Shown here piece after piece: positions 1,176-40,437 of a stretch of 64,000 nucleotides of DNA (positions are counted from its first letter, which is position 1; each line of letters begins with the position of its first letter). The stretch is from Fonticula alba ATCC 38817 (lineage: Eukaryota; Protista; Nucleariida). The position numbers were made by a program, and so were the translations under genes. The stretch lies in NCBI GenBank assembly GCA_000388065.2, contig KB932205.1, one strand, 5' to 3'. Below the pieces are notes generated by a model. The model did no database searches. It saw only the letters and a program-made list of their open reading frames with translations, and was not told where the DNA came from.

Positions 1176-4129
1176 TCACAGGGTGCCGGAATTCAGCACG
1201 GCCAAGAGACGCTCGGCCACCAGGGACCGGGCGGTGAATTGGCAAACCCGGCTGCCGGGAGTGCTGCGCCGAAGCAGAATCGCCAGCCGCCGGCCAGAGA
1301 GCGCCGAATAAAGGTCCAGCCAGGAGCACACGGTGGCCATGTCCAGGGAAAAGGCTGTTAGCCGGGCGGGCAGGGACTCGGGGGCCGAGGTGGCCTGGGC
1401 CTGGCGATTTGCCGATGTCAAGCTCCACTTGAGGATGTGCTCGGTGGCCTGCAGGAGATCGGCCTGCGCCGGCGGCACAGCGGCCAGGGGAAGGGCCACC
1501 ATGGCTGCCGTGCGCACGGCATCCGGCACCCCGGGCCCGAGGGGAAGAGGCTCCAGCCCCGGGATGTCGGCCATGGCCGTGCACAGGCTGGTCAAATCCC
1601 GGGCAAGGGCAACGTCATCGATGTCCGGTGGGCTGCCAGGGGTTCCGGGGCCGGCCTCGGCGGCGGTCACCACAACCATGATCGCCAGCAGCACTCGATC
1701 AATGGCCCGATCGAGGTCCCTCGCCAGAAGCCCATCCACCTTTTTCAAGAGGGCGGCCGCCGGGTCTTGAAAGGCACTCAGCTGGTAGATGATGGGCTTC
1801 CGGTCGCCGGCGCCCGAGGCAATGACCGCCGGGCGCTGGGGCTCCAACGGCGCCGGGGCAGTTTGATACTCGGTCACCGATTGGGGGTCCGAGTCTTGGG
1901 CTCGGCCTCCGGGCCCGCGTGCCAGCATGACATACGACAAAAAGCGAACCGGCCAGGTGGGATCCCAAACAGTGCCAGCCCCCGGCTGGAGGGCATACTG
2001 CGGTACGACCGGCAGGAAGAAGGTCAGCTGGTGGCCACTTCGTTGGTGTCCAGCCAGTAGGGCTGCCACACTTGGTAGGGCCAGATCTGCAGGAACGCCG
2101 GTAAAAGCCGAGCCGAAGGCCAGGTGGAAGAGCGGCAAGTGGAAGCACTGCTGCATCAGCGGCTGCACCAGGTACAAGGCCTCGCGGCAGCGACATCGGC
2201 CCGAGCCAGCCTCGGATCCCGGGGCAGGGGGGGCTATGCTGGCGGGAAGATTCGGCGGCGGCCGGGTGGCAAAAATGCACCAGGGCTCCGCCAGGATGGG
2301 AAGGCGCTCCCTGGACAGGAAGGCATGGAGATCCGTGGCGAACTTCAGCATGCGACCTTCGGAGAGGCAGTCAAGGCCGGCATTGAAAATCCCGAGGCAA
2401 AGTAAAATCCCATCGTGAAGGGGCTTGACACCGGAGACACTGACCGGCGCGGGGGCCCCCTGGCCGAGGGCGGCTTGAAAGCGATTGGCCTTCAGCATCA
2501 GGGTGCCCGGGCCGCTACATTGGTGCAAATACTCGACCAGGGGCCCCAGCTGGTCCCGATGCCGGCGCATGGACGCCACAACTTCGGCCCGGACCCCGGG
2601 CAGATGGCTGGCCGGCTGGCGGAGGAACTCCTCCAATGCCGCCGGTTCCGGCAGGTTAAGCAGTATGACGCGCAGGATTTCCGTGGTCATATGCACCCCC
2701 TTCATGAGCGTTTGCCAGAAGGGGTGGAAATTGGCCCCGTCCACCGGCCAGGAGGAGTTGCGGTCCTTGTAGCACCCGGGCACAATGCGATAGTAGTACA
2801 GCAAGCGATTTTGGTACTTGGGAGCAAATCGGAACCCATCAAAGAGGAGGCTCCATAGGCGTAGGTCAGGTGGCCCGAAGTCGCAGCCCAAGATCAATGG
2901 CAGCCAGGCCAGCTTGGTGACTGTGATGAGCGGGGGGCTTGTCAAAAGGCGCGTGGTCCAGGCGAGTGCCAGGTGGAGGGAAGACACTTACCGGTTGTTG
3001 AGAGCATGGTGGCCAGCGTGGAGGTGAGGAGGGTTTCGCCGGGGAGCGGCACGTCATAGGCATCACCCGGGACGAAGATCGGCCGGTGGTCAGCCGGGTC
3101 GCGCTCCAGGCGAAATTGCTTCTGGAAGAGGGACGACATCTTCACCTGGCCAAAGGCATGGACGAAGAAGTCCGAGTCATTGCTGGCTCGCCGGCCGGGG
3201 CCCGGGCAACCAGGGGCAAGGTCAGGAGGGGCGACGAAGGGGAAGAGGAAGAAAAGAGAAAGAAACAAAAAGACCCGCCCCTAGGACAGGGCATGGTGCC
3301 AGGCGCCTGGGTTCCCTAGCCCGGTCCATGGCCCCCCCCCCCCCCCCTCCCTCTGACAAGCGCACCTGACAACAGGAGTGCTGAAGTAGAGACTCAGCAG
3401 GGCCAAGATGTCATCGGCCTCGGCGGGGGACCCAATGAAGGCCAGCCTGTCGGGGCGGGCGTGTGCCTGGGCCGCCAGATACCCTTGGACATTCGCACGG
3501 ATGTTGGGAAAGGCGATGGTATCGCTGAGGGGAGGCATCCGTTGCCGGGCCCGGCCGGCCGCCCGCCCAGTCCCCGTGCGAATCAAAGCGCGAAAGGGGA
3601 ATCAGACCAAGACACACAGGTGCGAGGGAGGGAGGAAGAGGGAGAGAGAAAGGAGGAGCATGGTCGTGTGGGACGTCGAGCACACCTGATCACACGCAAG
3701 CCGGTGACGTCGCCGGCCACCAGGCTAGAAAGGGCCCCGGTCAGGTCGCGGGTCTTGTCACGAAAGCGACTCAAAGCGGTGGCCGCCTTCTCCGGGGCAA
3801 CGGCCCCGTCGGCCACAAAGATGGGGTACAACTGGGAGGCATGTGTGAGGGGCGATCTCTGCTGGAGGCTGTCACAGGGGCACAAAGCAAATGCATACCC
3901 GGTGATGATTCAGCCAGCCGATGAGGGCGTCGAGATACGGGGCAATCAGCGGCGCATCGTAGCCGATGCTTCGAGTTTGGCCGGCGTAAACATAGTGACT
4001 CCGGGACAGGACATACACCAGGCTGCCGACGTCGACTGGCAGGGCGCGGAGCCCTTCAGCCGGCGCGAGTGTCCCAACTCGGTGGGGCAGACTGCTGCGC
4101 ACGAGAGAAGTCAGCCGAAAGACGCCCAT
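1176..4129 (-). CDS. XPG/FEN1-superfamily (Asteroid/FAM120-like) PIN nuclease, array copy 1 (~823 aa, 5 exons)
   Basis: Exons 4129-3899, 3831-3686, 3524-3366, 3182-2992, 2920-1176, all GT-AG, total 2472 nt in frame. Motifs MGVFRL, LPVD, FVADG..PEK, GSPAEADD, VSNDSDF, LILGCDF match the N-region, I-region and H2TH acidic motifs of 5'-nucleases. Confidence 0.8.
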
Positions 4130-4834
4130 AGCTCACGAACGACGCCAGGATCGGGTTGGGGATCAACAGAAGGCCGGAGAATGGGTAGAGGGAGAGTCGG
4201 AGGAGACGCGCGAGCGTGGGAGTCGGGGGGGGGGGGAGAGGGACAGGGAGGAAAAGAGGACGAGATACAGGGGGACTGGGTCACGATGGGGCAAGAAAGG
4301 GGGGGGGAGGGGGATCTGGTGCTCGTGGGGCATTGGTCCCGCAGGCATACCGGCGGCCAGCCGGATCGGGCGGCTCGGTGAAAAGCGTCCGACCCGCCGC
4401 GATTAGTCGGTGCCTGGTGGCGAGGGGGGGGCATTCGTGGGCATTTGGGATTGTGGGCTACTTTGTTTTCGGCCCGCGTCGATGCCCGCGTGGAGTGGTA
4501 TATGTTCTTGCGCCTGAGCCTCGAAGGTGGCCCGCTCGGCGGAGTGTGTCCAGGAATGAGCGGGCGCCCGAAAAACGAAGGAAAAAGAGAGAGAAAAAAA
4601 AGACCCCCCCCCCCGCTCGATGGATGTGGTAGGTGTATACACCTGTGAAGGGATGCCACTCGTTTTGTGACATTTGTATTGGCAAGAGGAGGGGGCGCTT
4701 TGCGCTTGAGAGACAGGAGGCGAGAGGGGGGAGGGGGGGGAGGGAGAGGGGAGGATGGGCGTGTCGCCCCCCGCGCCTCGTGTGGTCACCCTTCGCAGGG
4801 ACGCCTGGCCAATTGGGCATTTCGCAGGCCCCTC

Positions 4835-7762
4835 TCAGAGACCCCTCTGTGCAAGGATCTGAAGCAGGGTGGCAACCATGATTGAGCGAGAGGAGGGCTG
4901 GTAGTCGCCAATCTTAGCCGGCCGAGCAAGCACGAAAGGGCAATCCCGCTCGGAATGGACGTGCTGCGTATCCAACAGCAGCTGGCGGCCGGCCAGGACC
5001 GAATAGAGATCCAGCCATGAACTGACCGTGGCGATGTCCGACGAAAAGGTCGAGAGCCTGGCCGGCGAGGGGGCATCCAGCTGCCCGGAGGGTGGGCCTT
5101 GCGGCGGGCTTGGTGCTGGTGGGACGGGCGACAGGCAACTTGCCAGCACATCGTGCAGAAGGGCCCGGCCATTGGCAGCAGGCGGGGTGCCGGGGTCGGG
5201 GGAGGGCAGCACGCGGACAACCTTCCGGCGAATGGCGTCGAGGTCTTCCTCGTGATTGCCAGCCTGGGCCATGGTCTTGCCATGGAGCAGGGCATTCACC
5301 AGGAGAGCCATGTGCCGGAGGAGGATGGTCCGGGATTGGGTGTCGAACAGTTGCTCGCCCGGGGCGGCTCGAGAGGGGCGGCTCGACAGCAGGACGGCTG
5401 TCAGCAGGATCCGGTCGAGGGCCAGCGATGAGCCCGGGGCATCATCGGCCAAGGCCACATCGACGGCCCGAAGGAGGGGCACAATTTCACCGGACAGCCC
5501 CTTCAGCAGATAGTCTTGGCTCTTCTTGGTAGAGGGGAGGACCTTCTGACCGTCGAGTCGGACCGGCGGGTCGTAAAATTCGATGACCTTCCTCACGGCC
5601 GGGCCCTGGAGGCCTTCCTTGCCGTGGGACAGCAGGGCATACAGCAGGAAGCGAATGGGCCAGGATGGCGCCCAAACACTCAAATCGTCCCTGAGGCTGA
5701 ACTGCGGCAGCAGGGGCAAGGAGGCAGCCCGGTAGCCATCGGCATCGTCCAATTTGGCCAAAAACACATCGGCCACCGTCAAGCCGGGAGCCGCGGTCGA
5801 GCCCACGCGCGAGATGAAGAAGGCCTGCACGGTGAGCGGCAAGTAGAGCCCCTCATGAAGAAGCGGAATCGACAGGTAAGGCGCCTCGCGGCAGCGGCAC
5901 TTGGCCCTATGGGCGGGTGGTTGGGGCGGGCCGGCGCTTGCGGTGCTGGCCTCGGCGCCCGATGCGCCGCCACCGGCAGGAGCAGCCGCCCGGCCGCCGG
6001 GGCGCCGGCCGTTGCTGGCATTCGAGGCGACGGCCGGAGGCGGCCCGACCGGAGCGTCCTCGGCGAGCCCGCCGGCTGCATCGTCTGCGCGAGGGAGCCG
6101 CGGCGGAGCACGCTCCGAGGAGAGGCACCAGAGGTTGGATTTGTCGAAAGAGCTGTCAGCATGCAGGAAGTCCTCGAGCTCCTTGCTGAAGGACGAAAGG
6201 ACCACGCTGTCGGGAGTGCACAGGCCGGCGGTGGAAATCCCCAGGCAAAGGAGCACCCCGTCGCGAAGGGACTTCACCTTGTGCAAGGGGTTGATCGGTT
6301 CCTGGGAGGGCTGCCTGCCGGCAAGCTCCTCGCGGTATTTGGCACGAAGCAGCAGGACCCCCGGGCCGCTGCAACGGCGGAGGTCCTGCAGGGCGGGCAC
6401 CAGGTGCGACAGGGACCGGGATCGGGAGGGCGCGATGCCCGACCGGAAGAAGGGCAAGCTCCGCCGGGCGCCGGCCGAGTCCACGGCCTCCAAGGCATCG
6501 GGCTCCGGAAGGGACCCCAACAGGCGGATGATCTGGTCGATGTCCAAGCCGGAGTTGAGAATGGTCTCACGCCAGTTGTCTTTGATGGCGGGGGCCTGCC
6601 CCGGGACGTGGGGCTGGCGAACATCCTGGAAGCACTTGTCGACGCAGTTGAAATATGACCTCAGGGAGTTGGCCAAGGGGGCGAACTGCGTGTCGCTTTC
6701 GATGAACTTGCGGATCCGCCAATCCGGCGGCCCGAGATCCGAGCCAAGAATGAGCGGCAGCCAGCAGAGCTTCGTCACTTGGGCGCGATTTTGGCCGATG
6801 GCCGATGTCAGGCACATGAGCAAGGCCCTGACGGCCGGGCAGAGGCCGGTCACAAGGACGACGCACCGGTGGTTTGGAAGAAGGCCGCCATGTCCGAGGT
6901 AAGGAGGGTTTTCGGCTCGAAGCGCTGGCCGGAGGTCCTGAAGGATGGCCCGGTCCCGGGGGAATTGCCGGACAGGAGGAATTGGCTCTGGAAAAGGGAA
7001 GACACCCGTGTCTGCCCATACCCATGGACAAAGAAGTCCGAGTCATTGCTGGCCAATGGAAGAGGAAAGACGAGAACCGGTCAGAGAGGCAGAGCCCCCT
7101 TGTGCTGGGGCACATCCTTGGCACCGGCCAGCCGGCGTACCTGAGTACAGGCACCCGGAAGTGCAGGCTCAAGAGCACGAGAATGTCATCGGCCTCGGTG
7201 AAGGACCCGATGAAAGCCAGACGGAGGGGGGCCTGGCGTGCCCGGGCCAACAGATGCCCCTGGGTGATTGCCCAGACATTTGCCAAGTCCACGCTGCAGG
7301 TGAATGGATCGTTCGCCATGTCCACAGCGTGTTTCCAGGGATTGGACCGCCGGCTTTTGAAGCAGCAAATTTGGCAACCAATCATGCAGCGTTCCTTGGT
7401 GCAGCCGTTGTGGGTGGGTACCAGGGTCCTCGGGTGGCAGGTCGGCAGATGCTGCGTGCCACGCAAGTGCCGATCGATGTGGTCCTGGTCAACCCGCCGG
7501 GGTCGAGGGGCATTGGGGCCGGCATTGGCGGAGCCGGTGGACGGGCCGCCCCGGGTGGCATCCTGATACACCGAAAGGTAGGACAGTTGTCTGGGCCGAA
7601 GCTTGCCGACCTTGCTCTTGAAGCGCATTTCCGAGGTGGCCTCCTTCTCTGGTGCCTTCGGGCCGTCGGCCACGAAGATGGGGTACACCTGGGTGAAAGG
7701 GCCGGCCAAAGTCCCCAAGAGCATGGAGATGGGTTAGGCGTTGGTGTATGCATGCATGCATG

Positions 7763-7793
<31 letters not shown>

Positions 7794-8106
7794 CTGTGCG
7801 TGCGCGCGGGGGAAAGGCAGGGGAGGGAAGGAGGAGAGGCGACACCAGGGTGGTTGGGCGTACGGCCTGTGTATGCAGCCACATGATAAGCGCATCCAGA
7901 TAGGGACCAATGAGCCGGGGAGTGTAGCCGATGCTTCGAGTCTGTTTGTGATAGAGGAAGTTGCTTCGGATCATCTCGTTGAGAAAGTTGTTCAAATCAA
8001 TCGGCAGGACGTAGGGCTTGGCGTCGGAGGGCATGGGACGATGGTGGGGGACTGTCGAACGTTGAGCCCTTTTTGTCAAAAGATCGACCAAGTTCAGAAC
8101 GCCCAT
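4835..8106 (-). CDS. XPG/FEN1-superfamily (Asteroid-like) nuclease, array copy 2 (~971 aa, 4 exons)
   Basis: Exons 8106-7864, 7688-7141, 7048-6867, 6777-4835, total 2916 nt in frame. Motifs MGVLNL, LPID, FVADG..PEK, GSFTEADD, SNDSDF, LILGSDL. Confidence 0.8.
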
Positions 8107-10566: not shown

Positions 10567-13500
10567 CTAGAGGGTGGTCTTGGTCAGGATGTCATACAGC
10601 ACATTCGCCACCATCGAGTGGGAGGAGAACACGACGTGGTTTGTGCCACGAAGAGGCACATTGTGAAGCAGGCTGATGGCCTCCTTGGGCTGGGTGTGGC
10701 TGAGGAGGGCCAACTGGCGCCCGGCCAGGACCGAGTAGAGATCCATCCAGGAGCACAGAGTGGCCAGCCTCAGGGAGAAGATGGTCAGGTGCTCCGGCGA
10801 GGGGGGCTCCTCCAGGGATGACGACTCCTGCTGCTGCTGCTGCTGCTGCTGCTCCTGTTGCTGCTCCTGTTGCTGCTCCTGTTGCTGCTCCTGTTGCTGC
10901 TCCTGTTGCTGCTCCTGTTGCTGCTCCTGNNNNNNNNNNNNNNNNNNNNNNNNNNNNNNNNNNNNNNNNNNNNNNNNNNTGCTGCTCCTGTTGCTGCTCC
11001 TGTTGCTGCTCCTGTTGCTGCTCCTGTTGCTCATCCTGTTGCTCATCCTGCCGCAGCTCCTTCGGCTCCTGCAGCTCCTGCGGCTCCTGCGGCTCCTGCA
11101 GCTCCTGCGGCTCCTGCAGCTCCTGCGGCTCCTGCGGCTCCTGCAGCTCCTGCGGCTCCTGCGACTCTTGCAGCTCCTGCGACTCTTGCTGCTGTTCTTG
11201 CTGCTGTTGCTGCTCATCCTGCTGCTGGGGCTCCTGCGGCTCATCCTGCTGTTGCTCCTGCTCCTGCTCCTGCTCCTGCTTCTCCTCCTGCTCCTGCTCC
11301 TGCTCCTGCCCCTGCTTCGGCTTCGGCTTCGGCTTCGGCTTCTGCTTCGGCTGCATCGGCGAGGAGACATCCCTGCCGAGGGACGCGTCCACCACCCGCT
11401 CCAGGCAGCACGCAATGATGTCCTTGGCGAGGGCGATGAACTTGTCCTGCTTCGGTGGGTGGAATGCCGTCAGGGCGCTGAAGGCCTTCATGCGAATGGA
11501 CGCCGGCAGGTCCAGCTGCTTCAGCACCTCCGCCGCTTCGGTCGCCTGGAACCCCCGCACATGGAAGCAGAGCTTGGCCATATTGTCGGCCAGATCCTTG
11601 TCCGCGGTGGGGGAAGCCTGCTTCGCAAAGAAGGTCGAAAGGATGATGGCCGCCAGTAGGGCCCGATCGAGGCCGCGCTGGAGATTGCCCTCCAGCAGAT
11701 CATCCACCATCCTCAGGAGGGCGACAATGTTTTCCTCCCAGTGCTGGCCCAAGTTGTAGTTGGACTCTTGGGTCGACGGGGCGCGGAAGCCCCAGCCATC
11801 CGGCACCGGCACCGGCACCGACTGGCACTCCCTCACGCGGATCATCTTGACCTGCTTGGCTGCGCCGCCATGCGGCCCGCGCGAGAGCATGGTGTACAGG
11901 AGCAGCCGGGCATGCCGGCTCCGGTCCCACACCGTGGCCCCCTTCGGCAGGATGGCATACTGCGGCAGGGGCGGCATGATGGACAGCTTCAAGCCCTTGA
12001 TGATCCACAGGTCGGCCTTGAAGGTGTCCACGATGCGCGAATACGGCCTCTGGATGTTCTTGGGATGGGCCATGCAGAAGGCCTGCGCAAAGAGCGGCAG
12101 ATGCGGCTGGCCCAGCATCAGCGGCTGGATCAGGTACGGGGCCTCGTGGCATTGGCAGAGCCGATGCTTGGGCCCCTCCCCGGCGCCGGTGCCCTCCTCC
12201 GCGGCCGAGCCGGCCGGCGGCCCGACATGTGGGCCGGGCTTCTGGCTCCGTGGCGGGGCCACCTCGTCCGGGGCCCCCTCGGGCTTGGCTGGCTTGGTCT
12301 TCCGGGCCGCCTTGGCCGGGGCCTTGCGGCCGGCTGCTTTCTTGGTCCCGGGCTCACAAGGGGGCTCATCCGTGGCATCCGACTCTGGGGGGCTCGGGTC
12401 CGTCGAGTCGGACGCCTCGACCGACGGCTCCGTGGTGTTGGGCCCCAGGCCGGCCAAGCCCTCATTCCCGGAGTCCTCCAAGCTCTGGGTCTCGGACTCC
12501 CGAGCGGACGGGCTGTGCTTCGCCGGGTCTTGGGCGGCGGCCGGCGGCTCGTCCTCCGGCCCTCGGGCGGCTGGCTTTTTGGCCTTCGGCTCGGGGGCGC
12601 CGGGCTTCTTGGCCTTCGGCTTTTTGCCCACCGGCTTGGCGCCAGCCGCGTCCTGGTCGGCTGGCTCCTTGTCGTTGGTCTCCGTGGCATCCGGCGCCGG
12701 GGCCGCGGGCTTCTTGAGGGGCGGCGCCTTCTTGCTGGCTGGCTTCTTCGGGGTGGTGCTTTTGGCGCTGGCCTCATTGGGGTCGGCCCCGTTGGGGGTA
12801 TCCACCTTGCCGCTGGCGCCGGTGGGGTCGGTCGCCTGGGAGGCGGACTTCTTGGAGGGTGCGGGCTTCTTGCTGGCCGGCTTCTTCGGGAGGGGCTTCT
12901 TGGCATCGGTCTCGGTGGCGTCGGCTCCGTCGGTGGTGGCCCCCGTGGCGTCGGGGTCCGCGGCGGCAGCCAGCTTCTTCTTGGCGACCGGCTTCTTGGC
13001 GACCGGCTTCTTGGCGTTGGGGCCCTGCTTGGGCGGCTTGGCCTCGTCGGGGTCCTGGCTGTCGGCCGCCTGGTCGTCGCACTTCTTCGTGGAGGGCTTC
13101 TTGGGGCCGGGCTTCTTGGCCGGCAGGTTTTGGGCTCCCGGCTTCTTGGTGTCGGGCTTTTCGTCGGTGGCCGGCACGGCGTCCGGAGCCGCGGTGGCCG
13201 GCTTCTTGGCAGCCGGCTTCTTCGCGGCCGGCGGCTTCTTGGCAGCCGCCGGGTCCCGGTTGATGTCCTTCTTGGCGCCCTGCTTGGCCATCAAGAGCCC
13301 CGCCTCGGCAGGCAGCATGTCACCGGGCTCCCGGTCATCGACCAGCCGAGGTGCGGGCCGCCGATGGGCAGATTCCCCATGGGCATCCCCCCCGGCGGCA
13401 CCGGCATCCTCGCCATCATCCTCCGTCGTTTGGGGGTCTCCTTGCTCGGCGGGCCCCTGATCAGCCATCTGCTCGTCGATGGCGTCGGCAGTGCCGGGCT

Positions 13501-26903: not shown

Positions 26904-26934
<31 letters not shown>

Positions 26935-30124: not shown

Positions 30125-33100
30125 CTACGGATACTCGGTGTTCATCATGAGGAAAATACACTCAACCACGAAGGAGGGGCTCGGGATGCGACACATTTCG
30201 CGGCCGGGACCCCCCGCGGCCTGCTGCAGGTGCAGGGACAAACGCCGCCCGGCCAGTGTGGCATACACACTCAGCCAGGAAGAGGCCAGGGACTGGGTCA
30301 TGGCCATGGCGTTGAGCTTTTCTGGCGAGAAAAGGACCGTGTGCTTGGTGCGGGGCCGCTGCGGTGCGGGGAGCTCCTGCGCGGGAGCGTCCTGCACACG
30401 GGCGTCCTGCACACGGGCGTCCCGCACACGGGCGTCCCGCACCGGGGCGTCCCGCACAGGGGAACCCTGGTCGGAGGTCTGCTTCGGGGGAGATGGCCTT
30501 TCGGGGGCCTTCCTCCCGCGGGTGCGTTTGCCCTGGGCCCCATCGGCCGAGCCCTTCTTTGGGGGATCCTTCGCAGGATGTGCCTCCTCCGGGGCTGGGC
30601 ATGCCGGGGCCTGGCCTTGGGACGCCCGGTCGGCCTCGGTCTGCGCGCGCAGTTTCGGCCGCGGGGCCCGAGGCTCTGCCGGGGATTGGCCCGACAGGGA
30701 CAGGGCCGAGTGAGCCGGAAGAAGGGCCTGCTTGGACGATGCCCTTCTCCGGCGGCCCGACTTGGCCATGGGTGAATCCTCCGAGGCCTCCTCGGCCACG
30801 CTCTGCGCTGGGGCTCGCGTTGGTGGCGTGGCCCCTGCCGATGCCGCCGGCACCGGGGAGGCGTGCCTCGCTCGGGGCTGCTCGGGCGGAATCGGCTCCT
30901 CGTCGGACACCGTGAGCCGCTCTACCTGCGCAGCCAGGGCCACCTCCACACCCGAGGGACAGGCCACCTGCACGCCGACATCCGTCCCGGGAGGCAGGCC
31001 GATGAAGGCGGCAGTGGCCCGCCGGGCACAGTACTCCAGGATGTACTGCGAAAAGCGAAGGTCCCCGGCAGGAGCCAAGGCCCGCCCGGCCACGCTACTG
31101 ACATCCCTTGGCAGGCCGAGCGAACGCAGATACTCCTCGATGGCCGGGTGGTCCTCCCGGGCCAGGACGGCCGTCAGCTCCCGGAGGAGCTGCAGGTCTT
31201 GGCCGATCTCCTCCGGGCCGGGGGGGCTGCCGGAATGGCGGTCCGCCAGGAGGATCATCAGCAGCAGCAGCCGGTCAAGGGCATGGCCCTCACGGTCGGC
31301 CCCCAGCAGCTGGTCCACGCGCTGCAGCAGCGGCATCACATCGAGGCAGGCCGTTTCGTAAGTGCGCATGACACATGCCGGAGCGGCGGGGAAGTGCCCG
31401 CCCAATTGGAAGGGCAGCGGCTCATACTCGACCACCCGAAGGAGGTCGGACGCCTGGTGCCGGCCGGCCGGGCCACGGGCCAGCAGGGCGTACGCCAGGA
31501 AGCGCGCCTGGCGAACGGGATTCCACACGGACACACCCTCTCGCAGGCCGAACTGAGGCATCCGCGGCAGGTGGAAGGTAACCTGGTGGGCGGCGCGGCC
31601 GCGCGACGCGAGGAAACTGTCGACCGCCATCGGTCGCAGCGGCGCCGGGGCCTCGGCATGCGTCGAGCAGAAGGCCGAGTGGACTTGCGACGACAGGAGA
31701 TTCTCCTGGAGGTGGGCTTGCGCCAGGTACAGCGCGTGCCTGCACTGGCACCGGGGAGCGGCTCGCGGGGATCTGAAGCGCTGCGGCGGCGGGCCGCCGG
31801 CCGGGGGGGAGAAGCTCGGCGGCGGCCGCGGCGAAAAGATGCACCACTTATTTCGAGGCCGCACGAACCGGGAGTTTGTCAGGTAGTTTTGGAGCTCCAG
31901 CGCAAACTCCCCCAGACGCCGGCTCCCGGCCTGGGCCCCGAGGCTGGCATCGAAGATGCCCAAATTCAACAGGATCCCATCGTGGATTTGCTTGACCCCC
32001 ATGTGGGGGAATCTCGGCCGCAGGTGCCTCTCCTTGAGCATGAGCGTCCCGGCGCCGCAGCTGGTCTGAAGGTGCTCCAGCAGGCCCGGCAGCAGGTCCT
32101 GATGCTGCAGCATCGGCAGGGCCAAGCTGAAGGGGATCCCCAGGTCCAGCTCCTCCGGGACCTGGACGAATTGCGCCAAGTCGGCCGGCTCCGGCAGGGC
32201 CTGGAAAATGGCACACAAGTCCTCCCGGGACAGGTTGGCATTCTTCACATACATCGACCAGTTGGACTTGAAGTTGGTCCCGCCGGACATCGGCCACGGG
32301 GTGTCCTGCAGCACGTAGCCCGGCTGGGCGCCCTGGAAGAAGGCCCGCAGAGAACCCCACCGCTTGGGGTCCATGTCGGCATTCTCCAGGAAAACTCTCC
32401 ACAGGCGTCCATCCGGCGGGCCGAAGTCCGCGCCCATGATCAGGGGGAGCCAGGCAAGCTTCGTGGCTGATGCTCGAGAGGGTGAGATGCGGCAGGCGGG
32501 CTGTCCGGCGGGTGGCCATGCGAGAAAGACCCCCCCCCCCTGCTCCCCGCGCGCGCCCTGTGCCTCCTGTGCCGCTGCGGCCCGGGAAGCGTGGTCAGCC
32601 CAACGCACAAGTGGTTTCACAGAGAGAAGCCAAGGAAGACGACAGAATAACCTCAGCGCGGATGGGCTTGTGAAAGCCCGACCCCGGCATGAAGACCGGC
32701 CGGCCATCGGGACCACTGCGCTTGAGGATGAATTGCTTCCGGAAGAGGGAGGAGGTCTTCATGCGGCCGAAGCCGTGGACGATGAAATCCGAGTCATCAC
32801 TGCATCACGGTCGGGAGGGGGAAATGAGAGGGCCAGGTCAGGAGGCGCGGAAGGGGTGACGGAGAGGAGGGAGCAGAGGAGCGCCGGCAACACACGTACC
32901 CGAGCACCGGCGCACTGAAATAGAGACTAAGCAGGGTCAGCAAATCATCGGCCTCGGTGAAGCAGGAGACGAAGGCCAGACGATCGGGGTACTGCCGGGC
33001 CAGGCGACCCAGCTGGTGCTGGATGTTGAGGCGAATGTTGGGAAGGGCGATGCCGGAGCTGTCGCGCCGGTGGAGGACCAGAGAGGAGGAGGGAGGCCGG

Positions 33101-33995
33101 GCAAAAGGCATCAGTACTTCGGCCCCCGGAAAAAGACCTTTAAGAAGGGCGCGCCAAAAGCCGGCATGCGGGTGCTACCTGAGTTTCCGGAAAGCCGCCA
33201 GTGAGTCGTCCTTCTGGCCGAGGGAGAGCTGCTGCAGGTAATTCTCCAGCGCCAAATTCAGCGACCGCGTCTTGCTCCGGAACCGCTCGTGCACGGTGAC
33301 GCTCTTCTCCGGGGGGTCAAGACCATCGGCCACGAAGATGGGAAAAATCTACCAGTGTGCAGCATGACGGGGGAGGGAGGGGAGGGGAGGGAGAGGCAGA
33401 GGGGGATGCAGAGGGGGATGCAGAGGGGGATGCAGAGGGGGATGCAGGGGGGGGGCGAGACACATCGGCCCAGGGGGGNNNNNNNNNNNNNNNNNNNNNN
33501 NNNNNNNNNNNNNNNNNNNNNNNNNNNNNNNNNNNNNNNNNNNNNNNAGAGGGGGATGCAGAGGGGGATGCAGAGAGAGAGGGAGGGGAGAGGAGGGAGA
33601 GGCAGAGAGAGAGGCAGAGAGAGAAGCAGAGGGAGAGAAGCAGAGGGAGAGAAGCAGAGGGAGAGAGAGATAGTTAAAGGAGATGTCCGGCAGCGGAGAG
33701 TGCAAAGCGCCGGGGTCGGGAGGAGACAACGGGCAGCAAGGGGCAGCAATTTTGCACGAACACTGTGATGGGCCAGCCACCCACAATATGCCTCCAGGTA
33801 GGGAGCAATGAGGCACGGATCAAAGGCAATCCCTCGGGCCTGGCCGGCATAGAGATTCCGGCTGTGCGTCAGGTCAAACATAAAACCGCCAAGGTCGACC
33901 GGCATCACGCGCAGCCCATTCCGCGGCGAGGAGATGATCCACGACCGAGAGGGAACATGCTCCTCGATGAGGGTGGTAAGACGGAAAACACCCAT
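30125..33995 (-). CDS. XPG/FEN1-superfamily (Asteroid-like) nuclease, array copy 6 (~1031 aa, 5 exons)
   Basis: Exons 33995-33762, 33348-33179, 33058-32900, 32799-32609, 32466-30125, total 3096 nt in frame. Motifs MGVFRL, MPVD, FVADG..PEK, SCFTEADD, GDDSDF, LIMGADF. Confidence 0.8.
33395..33575. repeat. 12-nt intronic tandem repeat (agagggggatgc) spanning a gap in intron 1 of copy 6
   Basis: Units present on both sides of the N run starting at 33479. Confidence 0.88.
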
Positions 33996-35679: not shown

Positions 35680-38600
35680 CTAAAGCGAGACGCTATTCAT
35701 GAGACTGAGGAGGCGCCCCACCACCAGGGAGCCGGACGAGCCATGGAAGACATCCACCTCGGCCGGGCCCCGCTGCAACTGGAGGGATAACTGGCGTCCG
35801 GCCAGGGCAGCATAGACATCCAGCCACGAATCAAGCGTGGCCAAGGCCAGGGCAAAGGCTTGCAGTCGCTCCGGCGATGGGAGGAGACGCGAGCCTTCGG
35901 CGGCGGATGCCGAGCTCCTGGCCCTCTGTGACGCCACAGAGGCAGCCTTGGCCGCCGCCTTGGCCGCCGCCTTGGCCGCCGCCTTGGCCTTCTGCTGGGC
36001 CTTCCGCTGGGCCTTCCGCTGGGCCTTCTTCTGGGAACTCTTGGTAGATGCGGCCTCGGGGTCCGAGTCTGGCTCGGCGCCTGGCGTCGCCTCAGGGGAG
36101 GGGCCCTCCGCCGGCAGCATGGGACACCGGGGCGGGGCGACCCCCGGGGGCTCGGTGTCGTGAGAGTCAGTGTCTGAAGGGCCCGCCAGGGGAGGAGTGT
36201 CAGGCCGCCGGGCCAGCCGGCCAGTGAGATCCTCCTCGGCCGAGGGAATGTCACCCATGGTCCGCATGGGAATAGCCTCCACGCCCAGCCGCTTCAGGCA
36301 CCAGCTGATGGTGTCTTGGATGGCCGCGTCATGGGCGATCAGGGCATGTCGAGCCGCGCGCAGGACCCCGGTGCCCTGCTCTTCCAGGTGCTTCACCGGG
36401 ACCAAGGCCCGGGCTGCCGGCTGGTATGCCTCCTCCGGCAGGCCCATCGCACCGAGAAGGGACTCGATGTCGGAAATGGTGGCCGGCGTGGCCACCAGGG
36501 CGGCGAGAGCCCGCACGAGCTCCATGTCATCCGGGGCCCGGTCCAGGCAATGCCTGTCCAGGGAAGCCACCGACAGGAGAACGGCCCCGAGGAGAATGCG
36601 ATCCAGGGCCGCCCCGTCGTCGGTGGCCAGGGCCGCATCCACACGCTGCAGGAGGGTCGTCGTCGAGGAGCACCGAGTGTCCAGGGCATAGGTGCGCACC
36701 GTGGCCGGCGGCCCGAAGGGCACCTGGCCGGCCGGTGGCATTGGCAAGGCCTGGTGCTCGAGGATCTCCCGCGGGTCCGACGCCTGGGACCGGCCAGCCG
36801 GGCCACGCGCCAACAGTGTGTACGCCAGCCATCGCATGGGCCGCGCCGACTCCCACACCGAGGCCCCGTCCAATTGCGGCAGGTGCGGCAGGAAAAACAT
36901 CAGCCGGTGAGCTCCCCGCGCCCGGGCCTGGAGAAAGTCCTCCACCATCGGCAAGCGCAGGGGGGCCGGCACCTCGGCATGCGCCGAGCAGAAGCCCGAG
37001 TGATACATCGGCAACCGCAGACACTCCTGCGCCTGGAACTGGGACAGATAGAGCGAGTCCCAGCAATGGCAGCGCACCCCGGGCGTATCGACCCCCGGGT
37101 GAGCCCCACCCCCGGGGTCAGCGGCCCAGGCGCGGGCACGATCCCGGGCTTCGGCCGCGGCCACCACGCCGGCTCGCACCGCGGCCTCGGCACCGGCATG
37201 CGCGCCGATCTGCCCGGCACTCTGCGCACCGGAGGCCATGCCGGCCTTGGCCCCGGCCTCGGCCCCGGCCCTGGCAGCACGGGCAGCCCAGGCCCGAGCC
37301 TTGGCCTCGGCACTGGCCAATGCCGCCGCCCGGTCGGCCTGCCGGGCAGTCACCAGCGCCTCGGCCTCGGCACCAACCAGGGCACCGGCCCGGGCACCGG
37401 CCTCGGCCCCGGCCCGGGCCCCGGCCTGGGCGCCGGCTCGCGCGCCAATCTTGGCACCGACACGCGCTCCGGCCTCGGCACCAGCCCGGGCCACTGCCCG
37501 GGCGACGGCCTTCGCATTGGCCCGCGCGCCCATGCGCCTGCCCACATTTACGCCAGCACGTGTGCCCGCCTCGGCCGCGGCCTCGATGATGCTCTCCGCC
37601 AGGGAGGCCATGTCGGCCTCGTGGCCGGCCTTCTCGCCGGCCTTCCTGCCGGCCCTCTCGCCGGCTCGGGTTGCAGCCCTCGGGGTGATCTTCGCCGGCA
37701 CTGGAGGAGACTCCACCATGGCCGGGGGATTTGGAGGCTCGGCCGCCTGTGCAGGGGCCTTCTTGCCTTTGCGCTTGGCCTTCTTCCTGGAGGCGGTATC
37801 CTTGTTGGTGTCGTCGGCCTTGGCCGCGGCGGCCTTGAGCGCGGCCTTTTTCGCTTCCTTTTCCTGGAGAGCAAGCCAAGCCGCCCTCTTGGCAGCGGCA
37901 GCGGTGGCCGTCTGCGCAGCCGCATGGAAGGTGTCCGCAGGGAGTGTCTCAAGCAACCCCACAAGGTCCACGTGCAAAAGGGCCGCAGAGGTGAGCTCCT
38001 CCGAGTCTTTGGTGGCGACCTTCATCGCTTCAAGCACAGTGGTCTTGACCAGGTAATTTGAAATGCCATTGGAAGACGGGCCGCGTCCTGGGGAAGAGCC
38101 CTCCCCCGAGGAAGCAGGCCCCGGGGTCTCGCCCGGGCCCTCCTCGGCGCCCTCCATGAAAGCGGCCGAGCCTGCTGCCAGCCGGGCGGCCGCGATGCCG
38201 GGCGGCTTCGGCGCCAATGCCGGCGCCGGGCGCTTGGCCAGGATGCACCATGGATGCCAGGGACTGATCACACGATCGGACACCAGGAAGGAACGCAGCT
38301 CGGTGAAGAATCTCAACAGCGGCTCCTCCTCCGGGCCGAGGACCGTCTGCGCCCCGAAAAGACCCAGGCACAGGAGGACCCCATCAAAAAGCCACTTCAG
38401 GACTTGGGGGTCCTGCTGTTGGGCGAGCGCGCCGTCGAGGGATGTCCTGTGAACAGAATCCTTCAGCATGAGGGCCGCCGGGCCGGCACACCGGCGCAAG
38501 TACGCCAAGACCGGAGGCAAGTGGCTCCGGTGCTCCAGCATGGCGAGCAGCACCTCATGCGGGACATCCGGCGGCGAGGCCATCGGGTCATCGAGGAACT

Positions 38601-40437
38601 CCGCCAACTGACTTGGCTCCGGCAGGGCGGCCAGCACTTCCCGTAGGACGTCCAACGGCAGTGTCTTGTCAGACAGGATGTCCCTCCAGTTGGGCTTGGC
38701 GCCGAGCTTGGGCCAGGGCCATGGGGCTGTCTGGTCCACATAGCAGGAGGCCACAAGGGCGGAGTATTTCCTGAGGCGCTTGGCCAGCGCCCCATTCGGC
38801 TGGTAACGTGGCAAGAGCAGGGTGAAGACCCGGCCATCGGGCGGCCCGAAGTCCGCGCCCATGATCAAGGGCAGCCAGGCAAGCTTGGTATCTGTGACAT
38901 CGGGGGGGGGGGGGGGGGGGGGCCAAGAGAGAGACCGGTCAGTGAAGGCACGAGCAGAGGAGGGGGCGGCAGCGGGCAAGCATGGGGCTTCGAGCGGGGC
39001 ACGGATGACGGACGGGTTGTTCGAAGGGAAGAGGCCAGTCTGGAGGAAAAGAGCGCCATCGCCCGAATGGGTGCTCGGTAGGACCTGGCTGCAAAGAAGG
39101 CAGGCTGTTCAAAGCCATTGGACTTGAGCACGAATTGCTGCCGCAAGATGGAGCTGATTTTGGCTTGGCCAAACCCATGCACAAGGAAGTCGGAGTCATC
39201 ACTGGACGCAGTAAGCCAAGGTGGAGAGGGGGCGTGAGAAACGGGGGGGGGNNNNNNNNNNNNNNNNNNNNNNNNNNNNNNNNNNNNNNNNNNNNNNNNN
39301 NNNNNNNNNNNNNNNNNNNNNNNNNNNNNNNNNNNNNNNNNNNNNNNNNNNNNNNNNNNNNNNNNNNNNNNNNNNNNNNNNNNNNNNNNNNNNNNNNNNN
39401 NNNNNNNNNNNNNNNNNNNNNNNNNNNNNNNNNNNNNNNNNNNNNNNNNNNNNNNNNNNNNNNNNNNNNNNNNNNNNNNNNNNNNNNNNNNNNNNNNNNN
39501 NNNNNNNNNNNNNNNNNNNNNNNNNNNNNNNNNNNNNNNNNNNNNNNNNNNNNNNNNNNNNNNNNNNNNNNNNNNNNNNNNNNNNNNNNNNNNNNNNNNN
39601 NNNNNNNNNNNNNNNNNNNNNNNNNNNNNNNNNNNNNNNNNNNNNNNNNNNNNNNNNNNNNNNNNNNNNNNNNNNNNNNNNNNNNNNNNNNNNNNNNNNN
39701 NNNNNNNNNNNNNNNNNNNNNNNNNNNNNNNNNNNNNNNNNNNNNNNNNNNNNNNNNNNNNNNNNNNNNNNNNNNNNNNNNNNNNNNNNNNNNNNNNNNN
39801 NNNNNNNNNNNNNNNNNNNNNNNNNNNNNNNNNNNNNNNNNAGAGAGAGAGAGAGAGAGGAAGAGAGAGGGAGGAAGAGAGAGGAAGGGAGGGACGGCAA
39901 ACGCACCTTATCCCAAGGAGGAGGCTCGAGACGTCACGGTCGGGGGCCGCCTGGTAGCCGTCCGTGTACTTGGTTAGGGCGCGGCGTAGATTTTGAGTCT
40001 TCTGGCCAAAGCGCCCAGCCACAGTTGCGCTCTTCTCGGGGGCATTCATGCCGTCGGCCACGAAGACAGGGTAGATCTAAGGTGTCGGAAAGCCGCAAGA
40101 GAAGGGGCAGGAACACGGAGCCCATGGATGCAGGAAGGGCTTTGGTCAGGAAACCGGCGAGACAGGCTCTCGGGTGACGCCAGGGGGGGGGGGGACAACA
40201 TACCTGATGGTGAGACAGCCATTCAATGAGCGCACTCAGGTATGGGACAATCAATGGCGGGTCGAAGGCCAGGCTTCGAGTTTGACCCTCATACAGGTTG
40301 GTATTCTGGCACAGCTCATACACCAGGCTGCCGACATCGATGGGCAAAACACGCAGACTGCCCTTCGACGGGGTGAGGAGCTCCGATTGGAAGGGGACCT
40401 CCTGAAGGAGGAGCGAGGTCAGACGGAAGACACCCAT
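35680..40437 (-). CDS. XPG/FEN1-superfamily (Asteroid-like) nuclease, array copy 7 (~1320 aa; one exon hidden in a gap)
   Basis: Exons 40437-40204, 40076-39907, [exon expected in gap 39252-39841], 39201-39014, 38891-35680. Motifs MGVFRL, LPID, FVADG..PEK, DDSDF, LIMGADF. The EADD exon is not visible. Confidence 0.74.

What the first reader, a model, noticed from the sequence alone, without database searches (positions are those of the whole stretch)
1176..40437. Head-to-tail array of seven diverged, mostly catalytically intact Asteroid/XPG-like 5'-nuclease genes
Seen: seven co-oriented spliced genes share MG[VI]xxL / [VI]D / FVxDG..P.K / EADD / [SG][ND]DxDF / GxD[FLH]GPPD motifs. They also share three intron positions: phase 0 before [YF]x[IV]FV, phase 2 just before NDSD, and phase 1 before KLAWLPL. 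The copies are too diverged to be assembly duplicates, and reading frames are preserved. Established: this motif order is the acidic active site of the FEN1/XPG/EXO1/Asteroid 5'-nuclease superfamily, and Asteroid-type genes are normally single or low copy. Inference: an old, maintained lineage-specific nuclease expansion with a constant core and variable inserts. That pattern is typical of diversifying defence or effector families (anti-viral or anti-transposon nucleic-acid surveillance, or self/non-self systems). This is the strongest candidate for an undescribed system in the window.
Basis: partly seen in the sequence, partly recalled or inferred. Interest (0 to 1): 0.85.

Follow-up and report, generated by a model that had tools for sequence, protein, structure and literature searches.

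The report
Seven tandem Asteroid-like nuclease genes
A 39-kb stretch of the amoeba Fonticula alba carries seven old, strongly diverged copies of one gene for an Asteroid/FEN1-type DNA- or RNA-cutting enzyme; most keep an intact active site, the family is found only in this organism, and its biological role is untested.

Summary
Seven co-oriented spliced genes lie on the minus strand of window 1176-40437 (Fonticula alba H696_03357 to about 03364). They share the motif series and three intron positions. Copies are 37-50% identical in the N-domain and 25-44% in the rest.

All five gaps were checked. One, in gene 4, is a false gap flanked by a 95-bp exact duplicate. Two lie in introns. One lies in a (QEQQ)n coding repeat of gene 3. 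The 590-N gap hides gene 7's EADD exon.

The N-terminal 330 aa is a FEN/XPG-type 5'-nuclease fold, closest to Asteroid:
- AF2 model pLDDT 83, with Foldseek hits to FEN1, EXO1, XPG, GEN1 and ASTE1.
- hhalign E 1e-14 to proteins carrying Asteroid_N.

All seven carboxylates and the gateway K/R are kept in five genes. Gene 3 reads QADD. Gene 7 is unknown at that motif.

A conserved C-terminal region of about 500 aa matches nothing. An exhaustive HMM search of 1.84 billion proteins found the full-length family only in Fonticula, at about 11 loci.

The defence or diversifying reading is untested speculation. UniProt already auto-names two copies "Asteroid domain-containing" and one "XPG N-terminal domain-containing". 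The scan separately noted a distant paralog (s1-065529) on other DNA of this genome.

The parts
1176..4129 (-). Gene 1 (H696_03357, P0001, 823 aa). Five exons: 4129-3899, 3831-3686, 3524-3366, 3182-2992, 2920-1179, plus the stop codon. Short arch with an extra phase-2 intron at 3685-3525. All catalytic motifs are intact.
4835..8106 (-). Gene 2 (H696_03358, P0004, 971 aa). Four exons: 8106-7864, 7688-7141, 7048-6867, 6777-4838. Degenerate Cys/His arch insert at about 7250-7500. Catalytic motifs are intact.
10567..17887 (-). Gene 3 (annotated as P0005, 2063 aa; about 2200 aa when read to the family C-terminus at 10570).
- About 300-aa acidic insert after the MGIFML start.
- Double H-C-C-C arch insert.
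- QADD in place of EADD, and RNDKDF.
- About 700 aa of E/T/Q and KKPA (H1-like) repeats.
- Gaps at 15628-15637 (intron) and 10930-10979 (inside a (QEQQ)n coding repeat).
- The annotated C-terminus is a gap artefact.
20167..24353 (-). Gene 4 (P0006, 912 aa, plus P0010, 139 aa, which are one gene of about 1006 aa). The gap at 20659-20737 is false: 20463-20557 duplicates 20738-20832 exactly. Double H-C-C-C arch insert at about 23494-23644. Catalytic motifs are intact.
25694..29100 (-). Gene 5 (H696_03362, P0002, 962 aa). Four exons: 29100-28867, 28744-28290, 28135-27945, 27702-25697. Single H-C-C-C arch insert at about 28456-28597. Catalytic motifs are intact.
30125..33995 (-). Gene 6 (P0007, 1031 aa). 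Five exons: 33995-33762, 33348-33179, 33058-32900, 32799-32609, 32466-30128. Short arch with an extra intron at 33178-33059, which starts with an in-frame stop and so is a real intron. The gap at 33479-33547 lies in intron 1. Catalytic motifs are intact.
35680..40437 (-). Gene 7 (annotated at 1317 aa; that protein was not retrieved). Exon 1 is 40437-40204 and exon 2a starts at 40076. The 590-N gap at 39252-39841 hides the EADD exon. The DDSDF exon starts at about 39201, and the last exon runs from about 38895 to 35683. D34, D86, DDSDF and GADFGPPD are present.
20463..20832 (.). Assembly artefact in gene 4. A 95-bp exact direct duplicate (20463-20557 = 20738-20832) flanks 101 bp plus 79 N.

Best explanation
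The window holds a tandem array of seven ancient paralogs from a Fonticula-restricted gene family of about 11 loci genome-wide.

**Architecture (shown).** Each protein starts directly (MG[VI]..L) with a FEN/XPG-superfamily, Asteroid-type PIN 5'-nuclease domain of about 330 aa. A family-specific C-terminal region of about 500 aa and unknown fold follows. Low-complexity inserts of very different length are spliced in between.

**Likely mechanism (inferred).**
- The enzymes carry out metal-dependent (two-metal-ion) phosphodiester hydrolysis using the seven conserved carboxylates. In P0001 numbering these are D33, D85, E161, D163, D181, D183 and D256, which correspond to FEN1 D34, D86, E158, E160, D179, D181 and D233.
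- The gateway residues K92 and R99 on a two-helix arch, and an H3TH-like KLAWLPLI(M/L)GxDFGPPD element, position a structured nucleic-acid end.
- These would therefore be structure-specific nucleases acting on DNA or RNA ends, flaps or overhangs, as ASTE1 does on 3' ssDNA overhangs.
- The paralogs differ mainly in the arch, which is the substrate-gating element. Genes 1, 6 and 7 have a short arch with an intron at the insert site. Genes 2-5 carry one or two H-x4-C-x4-C-x3-C modules there, probably zinc-binding.
- The most economical reading is sub-functionalisation to different substrates or partners.
- Gene 3 (QADD, an H1-like KKPA tail, an acidic insert) is probably catalytically weakened and binds DNA or chromatin.

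**Open.** Whether the cellular role is repair or end-processing, RNA turnover, or defence against foreign nucleic acid.
For: **Real genes.**
- Motifs and strand.
- Public models map exactly and share three intron phases.
- No internal stops, and a GC3 periodicity typical of coding sequence.

**Fold.**
- AF2 model of P0001:1-340 has pLDDT 82.8 and pTM 0.80, with the order beta1, beta2, two-helix arch, beta3, beta4, H3TH.
- Foldseek against PDB gives 54 hits at E<=1e-3. The 50 listed are all FEN1, EXO1, XPG/Rad2 or GEN1, with a best E of 6.8e-8.
- Against Swiss-Prot AFDB the hits are FEN1 plus ASTE1 of zebrafish and mouse. At 18%, the two ASTE1 rows have the highest identity in that table.
- AFDB clusters return XPG-I, Asteroid-like, FEN1, EXO1 and FAM120-like entries.
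- VIA-align on the independent full-length model gives T5 exonuclease, GEN1, T4 RNase H and FEN1 at Z 6-7.

**Homology.**
- hhalign of the Fonticula-only N-domain profile against Asteroid-like proteins gives probability 98.3% and E 1.2e-14. One of those proteins carries Pfam Asteroid_N.
- In the ESM Atlas, the nearest clusters by features are "protein asteroid"/XPG_I_2/FAM120A at 0.96. By structure, ASTE1, FAM120B and a basidiomycete Asteroid cluster score TM 0.64-0.68.

**Active site.** Invariant D33, D85, K92, R99, D163, D181, D183 and D256 across the family and its outgroups. Per-gene table.

**Age.** Tree with terminal branches of 0.7-1.3 substitutions per site.

**Restriction to Fonticula.** 16 hits among 1.84e9 representatives. 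All but two are Fonticula-type: annotated Fonticula proteins, or unnamed Logan fragments that match them. Metagenome loci match only the EADD..NDSDF core.

**Known activities of relatives.** ASTE1 cleaves 3' ssDNA overhangs (PMC12599495). Insect Asteroid/REase degrade dsRNA or DNA, and BmAst restricts a baculovirus (PMC10298989).
Against: - No Pfam model reaches its gathering score. The best hit is XPG_I_2 at 20.3 bits against a cut-off of 24.2.
- A Fonticula-only profile finds no solved structure at E<0.4. The link to FEN/XPG therefore rests on fold prediction and on bridging Asteroid-like sequences.
- No enzymatic data exist.
- Transcription is unverified. Small 2012 runs, guessed to be RNA, of the source organism hold 46-58% of gene 1's words. 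None was listed for gene 5.
- The AF2 alignment has only 11 sequences.
- The zinc-binding role of the arch insert is inferred from the Cys/His pattern alone.
- Gene 7's EADD motif is unread.
Confidence: 0.75

Rival explanations
1. The array is a diversifying innate-immunity or genome-defence family. On this view the paralogs recognise and destroy foreign nucleic acid (viral, transposon or prey-derived). The variable arch and inserts act as specificity determinants evolving under conflict.
For: - The tandem, lineage-restricted expansion has a conserved catalytic core and a variable substrate-gating arch.
- Asteroid-type nucleases have an antiviral or dsRNA-degrading role in Lepidoptera (PMC10298989).
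- An environmental variant of gene 5 differs by 5 nonsynonymous changes to 1 synonymous, plus an in-frame indel.
Against: - No test supports it. PADLOC returned nothing, although that library is prokaryotic.
- Neighbours are housekeeping genes: a Beta_elim_lyase gene and TIP49.
- The copies are old, not recently turned over.
- Paralog dS is saturated.
- The 5:1 count is too small to differ from neutrality. Gene 1 is 100% identical in two environmental assemblies.
- No induction data exist.
Confidence: 0.2
2. The proteins are non-catalytic or mainly scaffolding proteins of the FAM120/Mkt1 type. On this view the PIN-like domain serves as an RNA- or protein-binding module in post-transcriptional regulation.
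For: - FAM120A/B clusters are among the nearest ESM Atlas neighbours of the N-domain.
- Mkt1-type clusters are the weak nearest neighbours of the C-region by features, at 0.75.
- The long C-terminal region and low-complexity inserts suit a scaffold.
- Gene 3 has an E->Q change.
Against: - All seven carboxylates plus the K/R pair are kept in five of seven copies, despite 0.7-1.3 substitutions per site of divergence. This is hard to explain without catalysis.
- An Atlas score of 0.75 is below the tool's own lead threshold.
Confidence: 0.1
3. Most copies are decaying or unexpressed duplicates. Their long open frames would then be a by-product of about 68% G+C, with only one or two copies functional.
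For: - High G+C gives many long spurious ORFs in this window.
- No RNA run was listed as holding gene 5.
- Paralog dN/dS values are high, at 0.36-0.98.
Against: - Splice sites and intron phases are conserved in all mapped copies.
- Invariant catalytic and C-terminal motifs persist after deep divergence.
- Codon-position GC periodicity is present in every copy.
- There are no frameshifts or stops in 823-2200 codons once the gap artefacts are resolved.
- The dS estimates are saturated and biased by GC3, so those ratios are unreliable.
Confidence: 0.05

Closest known systems
Asteroid / ASTE1 family (Pfam XPG_I_2 PF12813, Asteroid_N PF27698), in the FEN-like group of PIN-domain nucleases
   Same: - N-terminal MG..L start.
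- D / FVxDG..K......R / EAD(D) / xNDSDF / GxDF motif order, with short EAD-to-NDSDF spacing.
- FEN-like fold with a helical arch and H3TH.
- hhalign E 1.2e-14 to Asteroid_N-bearing proteins.
- ASTE1 models are among the top structural hits and have the highest identity in that table.
   Different: - All scores fall below Pfam gathering thresholds.
- The C-terminal ~500 aa show no similarity to the C-terminal part of Asteroid-like proteins (hhalign probability 0.1%).
- Copies 2-5 carry a Cys/His insert in the arch.
- There are about 11 copies, seven of them in one array.
- Matelska et al. (PMC5499597) counted 1056 XPG_I_2 proteins across eukaryotes but give no per-genome figure. That Asteroid is usually single or low copy is my background knowledge.
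FEN1 / EXO1 / XPG(Rad2) / GEN1 structure-specific 5'-nucleases
   Same: - Same fold, with the best solved-structure matches.
- Same seven carboxylates and gateway K/R.
- A profile that includes Asteroid-like bridge sequences hits EXO1 at E 8e-5 and FEN1 at about E 5e-4.
   Different: - 11-17% identity.
- No significant hit from a Fonticula-only profile.
- No PCNA-box-type tail was recognised.
- The C-terminal architecture is entirely different.
FAM120A/B/C and Mkt1 (FEN-like PIN domains in RNA-associated proteins)
   Same: The N-domain is a close Atlas neighbour by features and structure (FAM120B TM 0.67). These are also long proteins with large non-nuclease C-terminal parts.
   Different: The Fonticula proteins keep a complete catalytic set. 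From background knowledge, Mkt1 is regarded as non-catalytic. No C-terminal homology was demonstrated (one search scores are below lead level).
Lepidopteran REase / Bombyx BmAst (Asteroid-type nucleases acting on dsRNA or viral infection)
   Same: They are Asteroid-type PIN/XPG nucleases with a reported role against foreign nucleic acid (PMC10298989). This is the only precedent for the defence reading.
   Different: They are animal proteins present as single genes. There is no evidence of shared regulation or substrates, and none was tested here.

Membership tests
FEN/XPG 5'-nuclease superfamily (FEN-like PIN domains) | PIN/5'-nuclease alpha/beta fold with a helical arch and an H3TH element | tested here: met
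   AF2 model has pLDDT 82.8. The Foldseek PDB top 50 are all FEN1, EXO1, XPG, Rad2 or GEN1, with E down to 6.8e-8. AFDB hits agree. VIA-align gives Z 6-7 on a second model.
FEN/XPG 5'-nuclease superfamily (FEN-like PIN domains) | Seven active-site carboxylates plus the gateway Lys/Arg | tested here: met
   These residues are invariant in the alignment with outgroups. They are complete in genes 1, 2, 4, 5 and 6. Gene 3 has E->Q at the first EADD position. Gene 7's EADD lies in a gap.
FEN/XPG 5'-nuclease superfamily (FEN-like PIN domains) | Pfam XPG_N or XPG_I at or above the gathering score | tested here: not met
   The best XPG_N hit is 15.4 bits against a cut-off of 22, in gene 3. There is no XPG_I hit.
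Asteroid (XPG_I_2 / Asteroid_N) | Pfam XPG_I_2 at or above the gathering score (24.2 bits) | tested here: not met
   Scores are 20.3 bits (gene 5), 16.1 (gene 2) and 12.1 (gene 1). The Asteroid_N model is apparently absent from the local Pfam copy: P0016 carries it in precomputed data but not in hmmscan.
Asteroid (XPG_I_2 / Asteroid_N) | Significant profile-profile homology of the N-domain to bona fide Asteroid-type proteins | tested here: met
   hhalign of A3 against A4 gives probability 98.3% and E 1.2e-14 over 181 columns that include the first five acidic positions, D33 to D183. The last, D256, comes from the MAFFT alignment.
Asteroid (XPG_I_2 / Asteroid_N) | Homologous C-terminal region | tested here: not met
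   hhalign of A5 against A6 gives probability 0.1%. The outgroup alignment has only two sequences, so this is a weak negative.
Asteroid (XPG_I_2 / Asteroid_N) | Structure-specific ssDNA / 3'-overhang endonuclease activity | not testable with these tools
   This needs recombinant protein assays.
FAM120 / Mkt1-type pseudo-nuclease scaffolds | Degenerate catalytic site, and family-specific C-terminal domains (MKT1_N/C, FAM120A) | tested here: not met
   The catalytic site is complete. There are no Pfam MKT1 hits. The Atlas C-region score of 0.75 is only lead level. A FAM120A Pfam model was not available locally.
Known (prokaryotic) anti-phage defence protein families (PADLOC) | An HMM match to any defence-system component | tested here: not met
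   No families matched for six proteins at E<=0.01. The library covers prokaryotic systems only.

The most novel reading that the evidence does not exclude
The array is a eukaryotic nucleic-acid immunity module. On this reading, a set of active Asteroid-type nucleases has substrate-gating arches diversified by loss or gain of one or two zinc-binding H-C-C-C modules. A private C-terminal domain would couple recognition of foreign (viral, transposon or prey) DNA or RNA to cleavage. It would be an opisthokont counterpart to paralog-rich prokaryotic defence nucleases.
Probability: 0.15. Interest if true: 0.75.

Novelty: new variant of a known kind. Interest (0 to 1): 0.45.

Why it matters
Asteroid-type nucleases are among the least understood branches of the FEN/XPG superfamily. 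Human ASTE1 only recently gained a role in trimming 3' overhangs with shieldin, and insect relatives act on dsRNA and viruses.

This family offers a natural series of variants of the substrate-gating element on one catalytic scaffold. It has about 11 members and is restricted to one lineage. Most members have an intact active site. The arch either lacks or carries one or two Cys/His modules, and there is a private 500-aa C-terminal region.

That series could show how arch architecture sets substrate choice, and what Asteroid-type enzymes do outside animals. Fonticula is also a key outgroup to Fungi.

If the family proved to be a defence system it would be notable. On present evidence it is a well-defined but functionally open gene-family expansion.

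The work also corrects three annotation artefacts caused by assembly gaps, in genes 3 and 4.

Tried and rejected
**RNA evidence.**
- One search ran on four RNA runs offered under a "same species label". They were not this organism: only poly-G/poly-C artefacts mapped.
- later showed that the true source-organism runs are different ones, from 2012.

**Homology searches.**
- Word-index searches were swamped by low-complexity words and returned only paralogs. The exhaustive HMM search replaced them.
- The full-length AF2 model from four sequences was poor, with pLDDT 40. I used it only for a VIA-align cross-check.
- Profile searches of PDB sequences with the full-length alignment and with the Fonticula-only alignment found nothing.
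- The C-terminal region had no match by PDB profile, by hhalign to the Asteroid-like C-terminus or by ESM Atlas.

**Selection.** Paralog dN/dS by NG86 gave dS of 0.7-1.4, which is saturated and biased by GC3. I rejected it as uninformative.

**Context.**
- The upstream 600 bp of the seven genes share nothing beyond generic C/T-rich tracts.
- Intergenic regions contain no pseudogene remnants.
- The long ORFs at 8549-10561 and 19179-20327 have no Pfam hit and are probably high-GC noise.

**Ideas considered and rejected.**
- Assembly duplicates: identities are only 25-50%.
- Transposon cargo or viral insertion: the genes have host-like GC, conserved spliceosomal introns and no terminal repeats.
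- Arch "introns" of genes 1 and 6 being unannotated coding sequence: both contain stops or shift the frame.

Full report
**Source and layout**

The window is part of Fonticula alba scaffold KB932205.1, assembly GCA_000388065.2. It is G+C-rich, at about 0.63-0.73.

The start codons (MG[VI]xxL) are at 4129, 8106, 17887, 24353, 29100, 33995 and 40437. I call these genes 1 to 7.

Public models exist for the genes:

| Gene | Model | Length |
|---|---|---|
| 1 | H696_03357, P0001 | 823 aa |
| 2 | H696_03358, P0004 | 971 aa |
| 3 | P0005 | 2063 aa |
| 4 | P0006, plus the separately annotated P0010 | 912 aa + 139 aa |
| 5 | H696_03362, P0002 | 962 aa |
| 6 | P0007 | 1031 aa |
| 7 | not retrieved | 1317 aa |

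UniRef names two of them "Asteroid domain-containing protein" and one "XPG N-terminal domain-containing protein".

The array ends at both sides:
- Downstream of gene 1 lies a convergent Beta_elim_lyase gene.
- No family hit lies beyond 40437.
- A TIP49 gene sits at about 54.6-56 kb.

**Gene structure**

Exact mapping of six public proteins onto the window confirms three shared intron positions in all six:
- phase 0 after exon 1, before [YF]x[IV]FV;
- phase 2 just before NDSDF;
- phase 1 before KLAWLPL.

In gene 3 the annotated acceptor for the second intron lies 78 nt upstream of the conserved position. Both are in frame.

Genes 1 and 6 have a fourth, phase-2 intron in the arch region, and gene 7 apparently does too (it reads into pyrimidine-rich sequence before its gap). 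These introns contain stops or shift the frame, so they are real introns.

At that same site genes 2-5 carry a Cys/His-rich coding insert. So do the dispersed paralogs P0003 and P0017. The insert consists of one or two H-x4-C-x4-C-x3-C modules, degenerate in gene 2.

**Gaps**

| Gap | Location | Finding |
|---|---|---|
| 20659-20737 | gene 4 | False gap. 20463-20557 is 100% identical to 20738-20832. P0006 and P0010 repeat the same 30 residues. Collapsing the overlap gives one in-frame gene of about 1006 aa that ends with the family's C-terminal motif at 20170. |
| 10930-10979 | gene 3 | Lies in a 12-nt repeat coding (QEQQ)n on both sides. After it an open frame carries the family C-terminus to 10570. 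The annotated end of P0005 is an artefact. The frame across the gap is unknowable. |
| 15628-15637 | gene 3 intron 3 | Poly-C run. |
| 33479-33547 | gene 6 intron 1 | Repeat. |
| 39252-39841 | gene 7 | Removes the exon that should carry EADD. |

With these resolutions, none of the seven CDSs has an internal stop. All show coding periodicity: GC3 is 0.77-0.92, GC2 about 0.5 and intron GC 0.63-0.71.

**Divergence and history**

Pairwise identity is 37-50% in the N-domain and 25-44% in the C-region.

A maximum-likelihood tree (842 columns; P0008 as outgroup) gives three groupings:
- (g4,(g3,P0003));
- a clade of g1, g5, P0017 and the sister pair g6-g7, unresolved apart from that pair;
- g2 on its own.

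Terminal branches are 0.7-1.3 substitutions per site. The duplications are therefore old. The two dispersed copies on a 637-kb scaffold nest inside the array's diversity.

NG86 dS between paralogs is 0.7-1.4. That is saturated and distorted by GC3 bias, so the dN/dS values are not informative.

**What the protein is**

Sequence models alone are weak:
- The best Pfam hits fall below their thresholds. XPG_I_2 reaches 20.3 bits against a cut-off of 24.2, and XPG_N reaches 15.4 against 22.
- A Fonticula-only profile finds no solved structure.

Four lines of evidence agree that the N-terminal ~330 aa is a FEN/XPG-type 5'-nuclease domain of the Asteroid branch.

1. *Profile-profile homology.* hhalign of the Fonticula N-domain profile against three Asteroid-like proteins gives probability 98.3% and E 1.2e-14 across the first five acidic positions (D33 to D183). 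The last, D256, aligns in the MAFFT alignment. One of the three proteins carries Pfam Asteroid_N. A profile that includes these bridge sequences hits EXO1 at E 8e-5, and also FEN1, Rad2 and XPG.

2. *Predicted structure.* An AF2 model of P0001:1-340 has pLDDT 82.8 and pTM 0.80. Its element order is beta1, helices, beta2, a two-helix arch, beta3, beta4, then an H3TH-like helix pair.
   - Foldseek against PDB returns 54 hits at E<=1e-3. The 50 listed are all FEN1, EXO1, XPG/Rad2 or GEN1.
   - Swiss-Prot AFDB adds ASTE1 of zebrafish and mouse at 18% identity.
   - AFDB clusters return XPG-I, Asteroid-like, FEN1, EXO1 and FAM120-like entries, plus the genome's own gene 6 model at TM 0.95.
   - VIA-align on the independent poor full-length model still finds T5 exonuclease, GEN1, T4 RNase H and FEN1 at Z 6-7.

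3. *ESM Atlas.* The nearest clusters by features are "protein asteroid"/XPG_I_2/FAM120A, at 0.96 with 210 of 256 features. By structure, ASTE1, FAM120B and a basidiomycete Asteroid cluster score TM 0.64-0.68.

4. *Active site.* D33, D85, K92, R99, D163, D181, D183 and D256 (P0001 numbering) are invariant across the family and its outgroups, and E161 is nearly so. By position these correspond to FEN1 D34, D86, K93, R100, E158, E160, D179, D181 and D233. The FEN1 numbering comes from established knowledge and agrees with the PDB mutant entries listed.

The per-gene table shows genes 1, 2, 4, 5 and 6 complete. Gene 3 has QADD and RNDKDF. Gene 7 is complete except for the unread EADD.

**The rest of the protein**

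The family is conserved along its whole length, not only in the nuclease core. Invariant positions include W-C, C-x-C, LPQ and a terminal FSL..A..CSWLD.YS.LSGR.L motif.

This C-terminal region of about 500 aa matches nothing:
- PDB profile search;
- hhalign to the C-terminus of Asteroid-like proteins, probability 0.1%;
- ESM Atlas, best features score 0.75 and best TM 0.29.

The most divergent paralog is P0008 (H696_02547, 1489 aa), the protein noted earlier by the scan as s1-065529. It shares the catalytic motifs and the terminal motif (hhalign E 2.3e-5).

Inserts differ widely in length and composition:
- Gene 3 has an acidic insert of about 300 aa after the N-terminal strand, and about 700 aa of E/T/Q and KKPA repeats (weak Pfam HC2 hit).
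- Genes 5, 6 and 7 have Ala/Gly/Pro-rich or basic stretches.

**Distribution**

An exhaustive HMM search of 1.84 billion cluster representatives gave only 16 hits at E<=1e-3.
- Fourteen are Fonticula-type. Eleven are annotated Fonticula alba proteins. Three are unnamed short Logan-assembly fragments that match family members.
- These hits cover six array genes (gene 7 was not listed), the P0010 fragment of gene 4, P0003, P0017 (H696_05427), P0008 and a C-terminal-only 327-aa protein, P0011 (H696_04191).
- The other two hits, at about E 1e-3, are Asteroid/XPG-like proteins of other organisms.

A metagenome scan found six loci that match only the EADD..NDSDF core. These are generic Asteroid-like genes of AT-richer eukaryotes. 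The full-length family therefore appears restricted to Fonticula, at about 11 loci.

I found no paper that describes it.

**Expression and population hints**

Both read-laying runs were lost.

The run index gives limited information:
- Four small 2012 runs of the source organism, guessed to be RNA, hold 46-58% of gene 1's sampled words. RNA runs can also hold DNA.
- For gene 5, no RNA run was listed as a holder.
- Soil, sediment and compost metagenomes hold near-identical gene 1 sequence.

Logan assembly contigs were compared with the window:
- Contigs from SRR17204937 and SRR35359257 are colinear with the genome, introns included. The run index codes its run ids, so I cannot say which listed sample these are.
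- Two gene 1 contigs, one from each run, are 100% identical to the window.
- A gene 5 contig from SRR17204937 is 98.5% identical over its 2205 aligned positions, counting the indels below.
  - Exons: 6 substitutions in 1853 nt (5 nonsynonymous, 1 synonymous), plus an 18-nt in-frame poly-Ala deletion.
  - Introns: 6 substitutions in 352 nt, plus a 4-nt deletion.
- Exons are thus more constrained than introns. The 5:1 count is too small to interpret.

**Interpretation**

*Shown:*
- There are seven real, old, tandem paralogs.
- They have a FEN-like, Asteroid-type nuclease fold.
- Most have a complete catalytic set.
- The C-terminal region is conserved but unknown.
- The arch is variable.

*Inferred (about 0.75 confidence for the core claim):*
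- They are active, metal-dependent, structure-specific nucleases.
- Arch differences point to different substrates or gating.
- Gene 3 is probably catalytically weakened and binds DNA or chromatin.

*Open:* the biological role.
- The defence reading (about 0.15-0.2) has only analogy in its favour, namely the insect Asteroid/REase work (PMC10298989). It has no direct support: PADLOC matched nothing, neighbours are housekeeping genes, and there are no recent duplications.
- An ASTE1-like role in end-processing or repair (PMC12599495), or a role in RNA turnover, is at least as plausible.

**Verdict**

The "undescribed defence system" claim is speculative.

The finding is best classed as a new variant of a known kind: a lineage-restricted, expanded and architecturally elaborated branch of Asteroid-type nucleases. 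Interest is moderate.

Noticed in passing
window 20167-20832: The public annotation splits gene 4 into a 912-aa protein and a 139-aa protein because of a false assembly gap. The flanks overlap by 95 identical bases (20463-20557 = 20738-20832), and both proteins repeat the same 30 residues.
   Followed up: yes
window 10570-11400: The annotated C-terminus of gene 3 is an artefact of the 50-N gap inside a (QEQQ)n-coding 12-nt repeat. The real family C-terminal motif lies after the gap and ends at 10570.
   Followed up: yes
window about 11400-14600 and 16900-17850 (gene 3): Gene 3 carries about 700 aa of E/T/Q-rich and KKPA-type (histone H1-like, weak Pfam HC2 hit) repeats. It also has an acidic insert of about 300 aa between the N-terminal MGIFML strand and beta1. 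This is unusual for a FEN-like nuclease.
   Followed up: partly
P0008 (H696_02547, another scaffold): The most divergent paralog (1489 aa) has an Asn/Lys/Ile/Ser-rich, AT-type amino-acid composition, unlike the Ala/Gly/Pro/Arg-rich array proteins. The tree tool flagged its composition as deviant.
   Followed up: partly
P0011 (H696_04191, another scaffold): A 327-aa annotated protein matches only the C-terminal third of the family. It is either a fragment or pseudogene, or a stand-alone C-terminal module.
   Followed up: no
L002 versus window 26041-28245 (gene 5): A Logan assembly contig from run SRR17204937 carries a gene 5 variant. It has 5 nonsynonymous changes, 1 synonymous change and an 18-nt in-frame poly-Ala deletion in exons. 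Introns differ about five times more densely. Gene 1 contigs from that run and from SRR35359257 are 100% identical to the window.
   Followed up: partly
window 1179-4129 (run index): Near-identical Fonticula sequence is held by soil, sediment, compost, sludge and feces metagenome runs, and by 2025 runs filed under another organism's label. The RNA runs offered under that label did not contain the organism.
   Followed up: partly
window 54661-55929 (+): An ORF with a strong TIP49 (RuvB-like AAA+ helicase) Pfam match (E 6e-86). It is a housekeeping neighbour about 14 kb beyond the array.
   Followed up: no
window 22-1005 (+): This is the start of an annotated 508-aa Beta_elim_lyase-family gene, convergent with gene 1. 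It marks the end of the array.
   Followed up: no
window 7765-7792, 8234-8267, 19362-19403, 25168-25256, 27783-27832: (TG)n, (AC)n and (AG)n microsatellites lie in introns and intergenic spacers of the array. One of these stretches tripped the read-laying filter.
   Followed up: no
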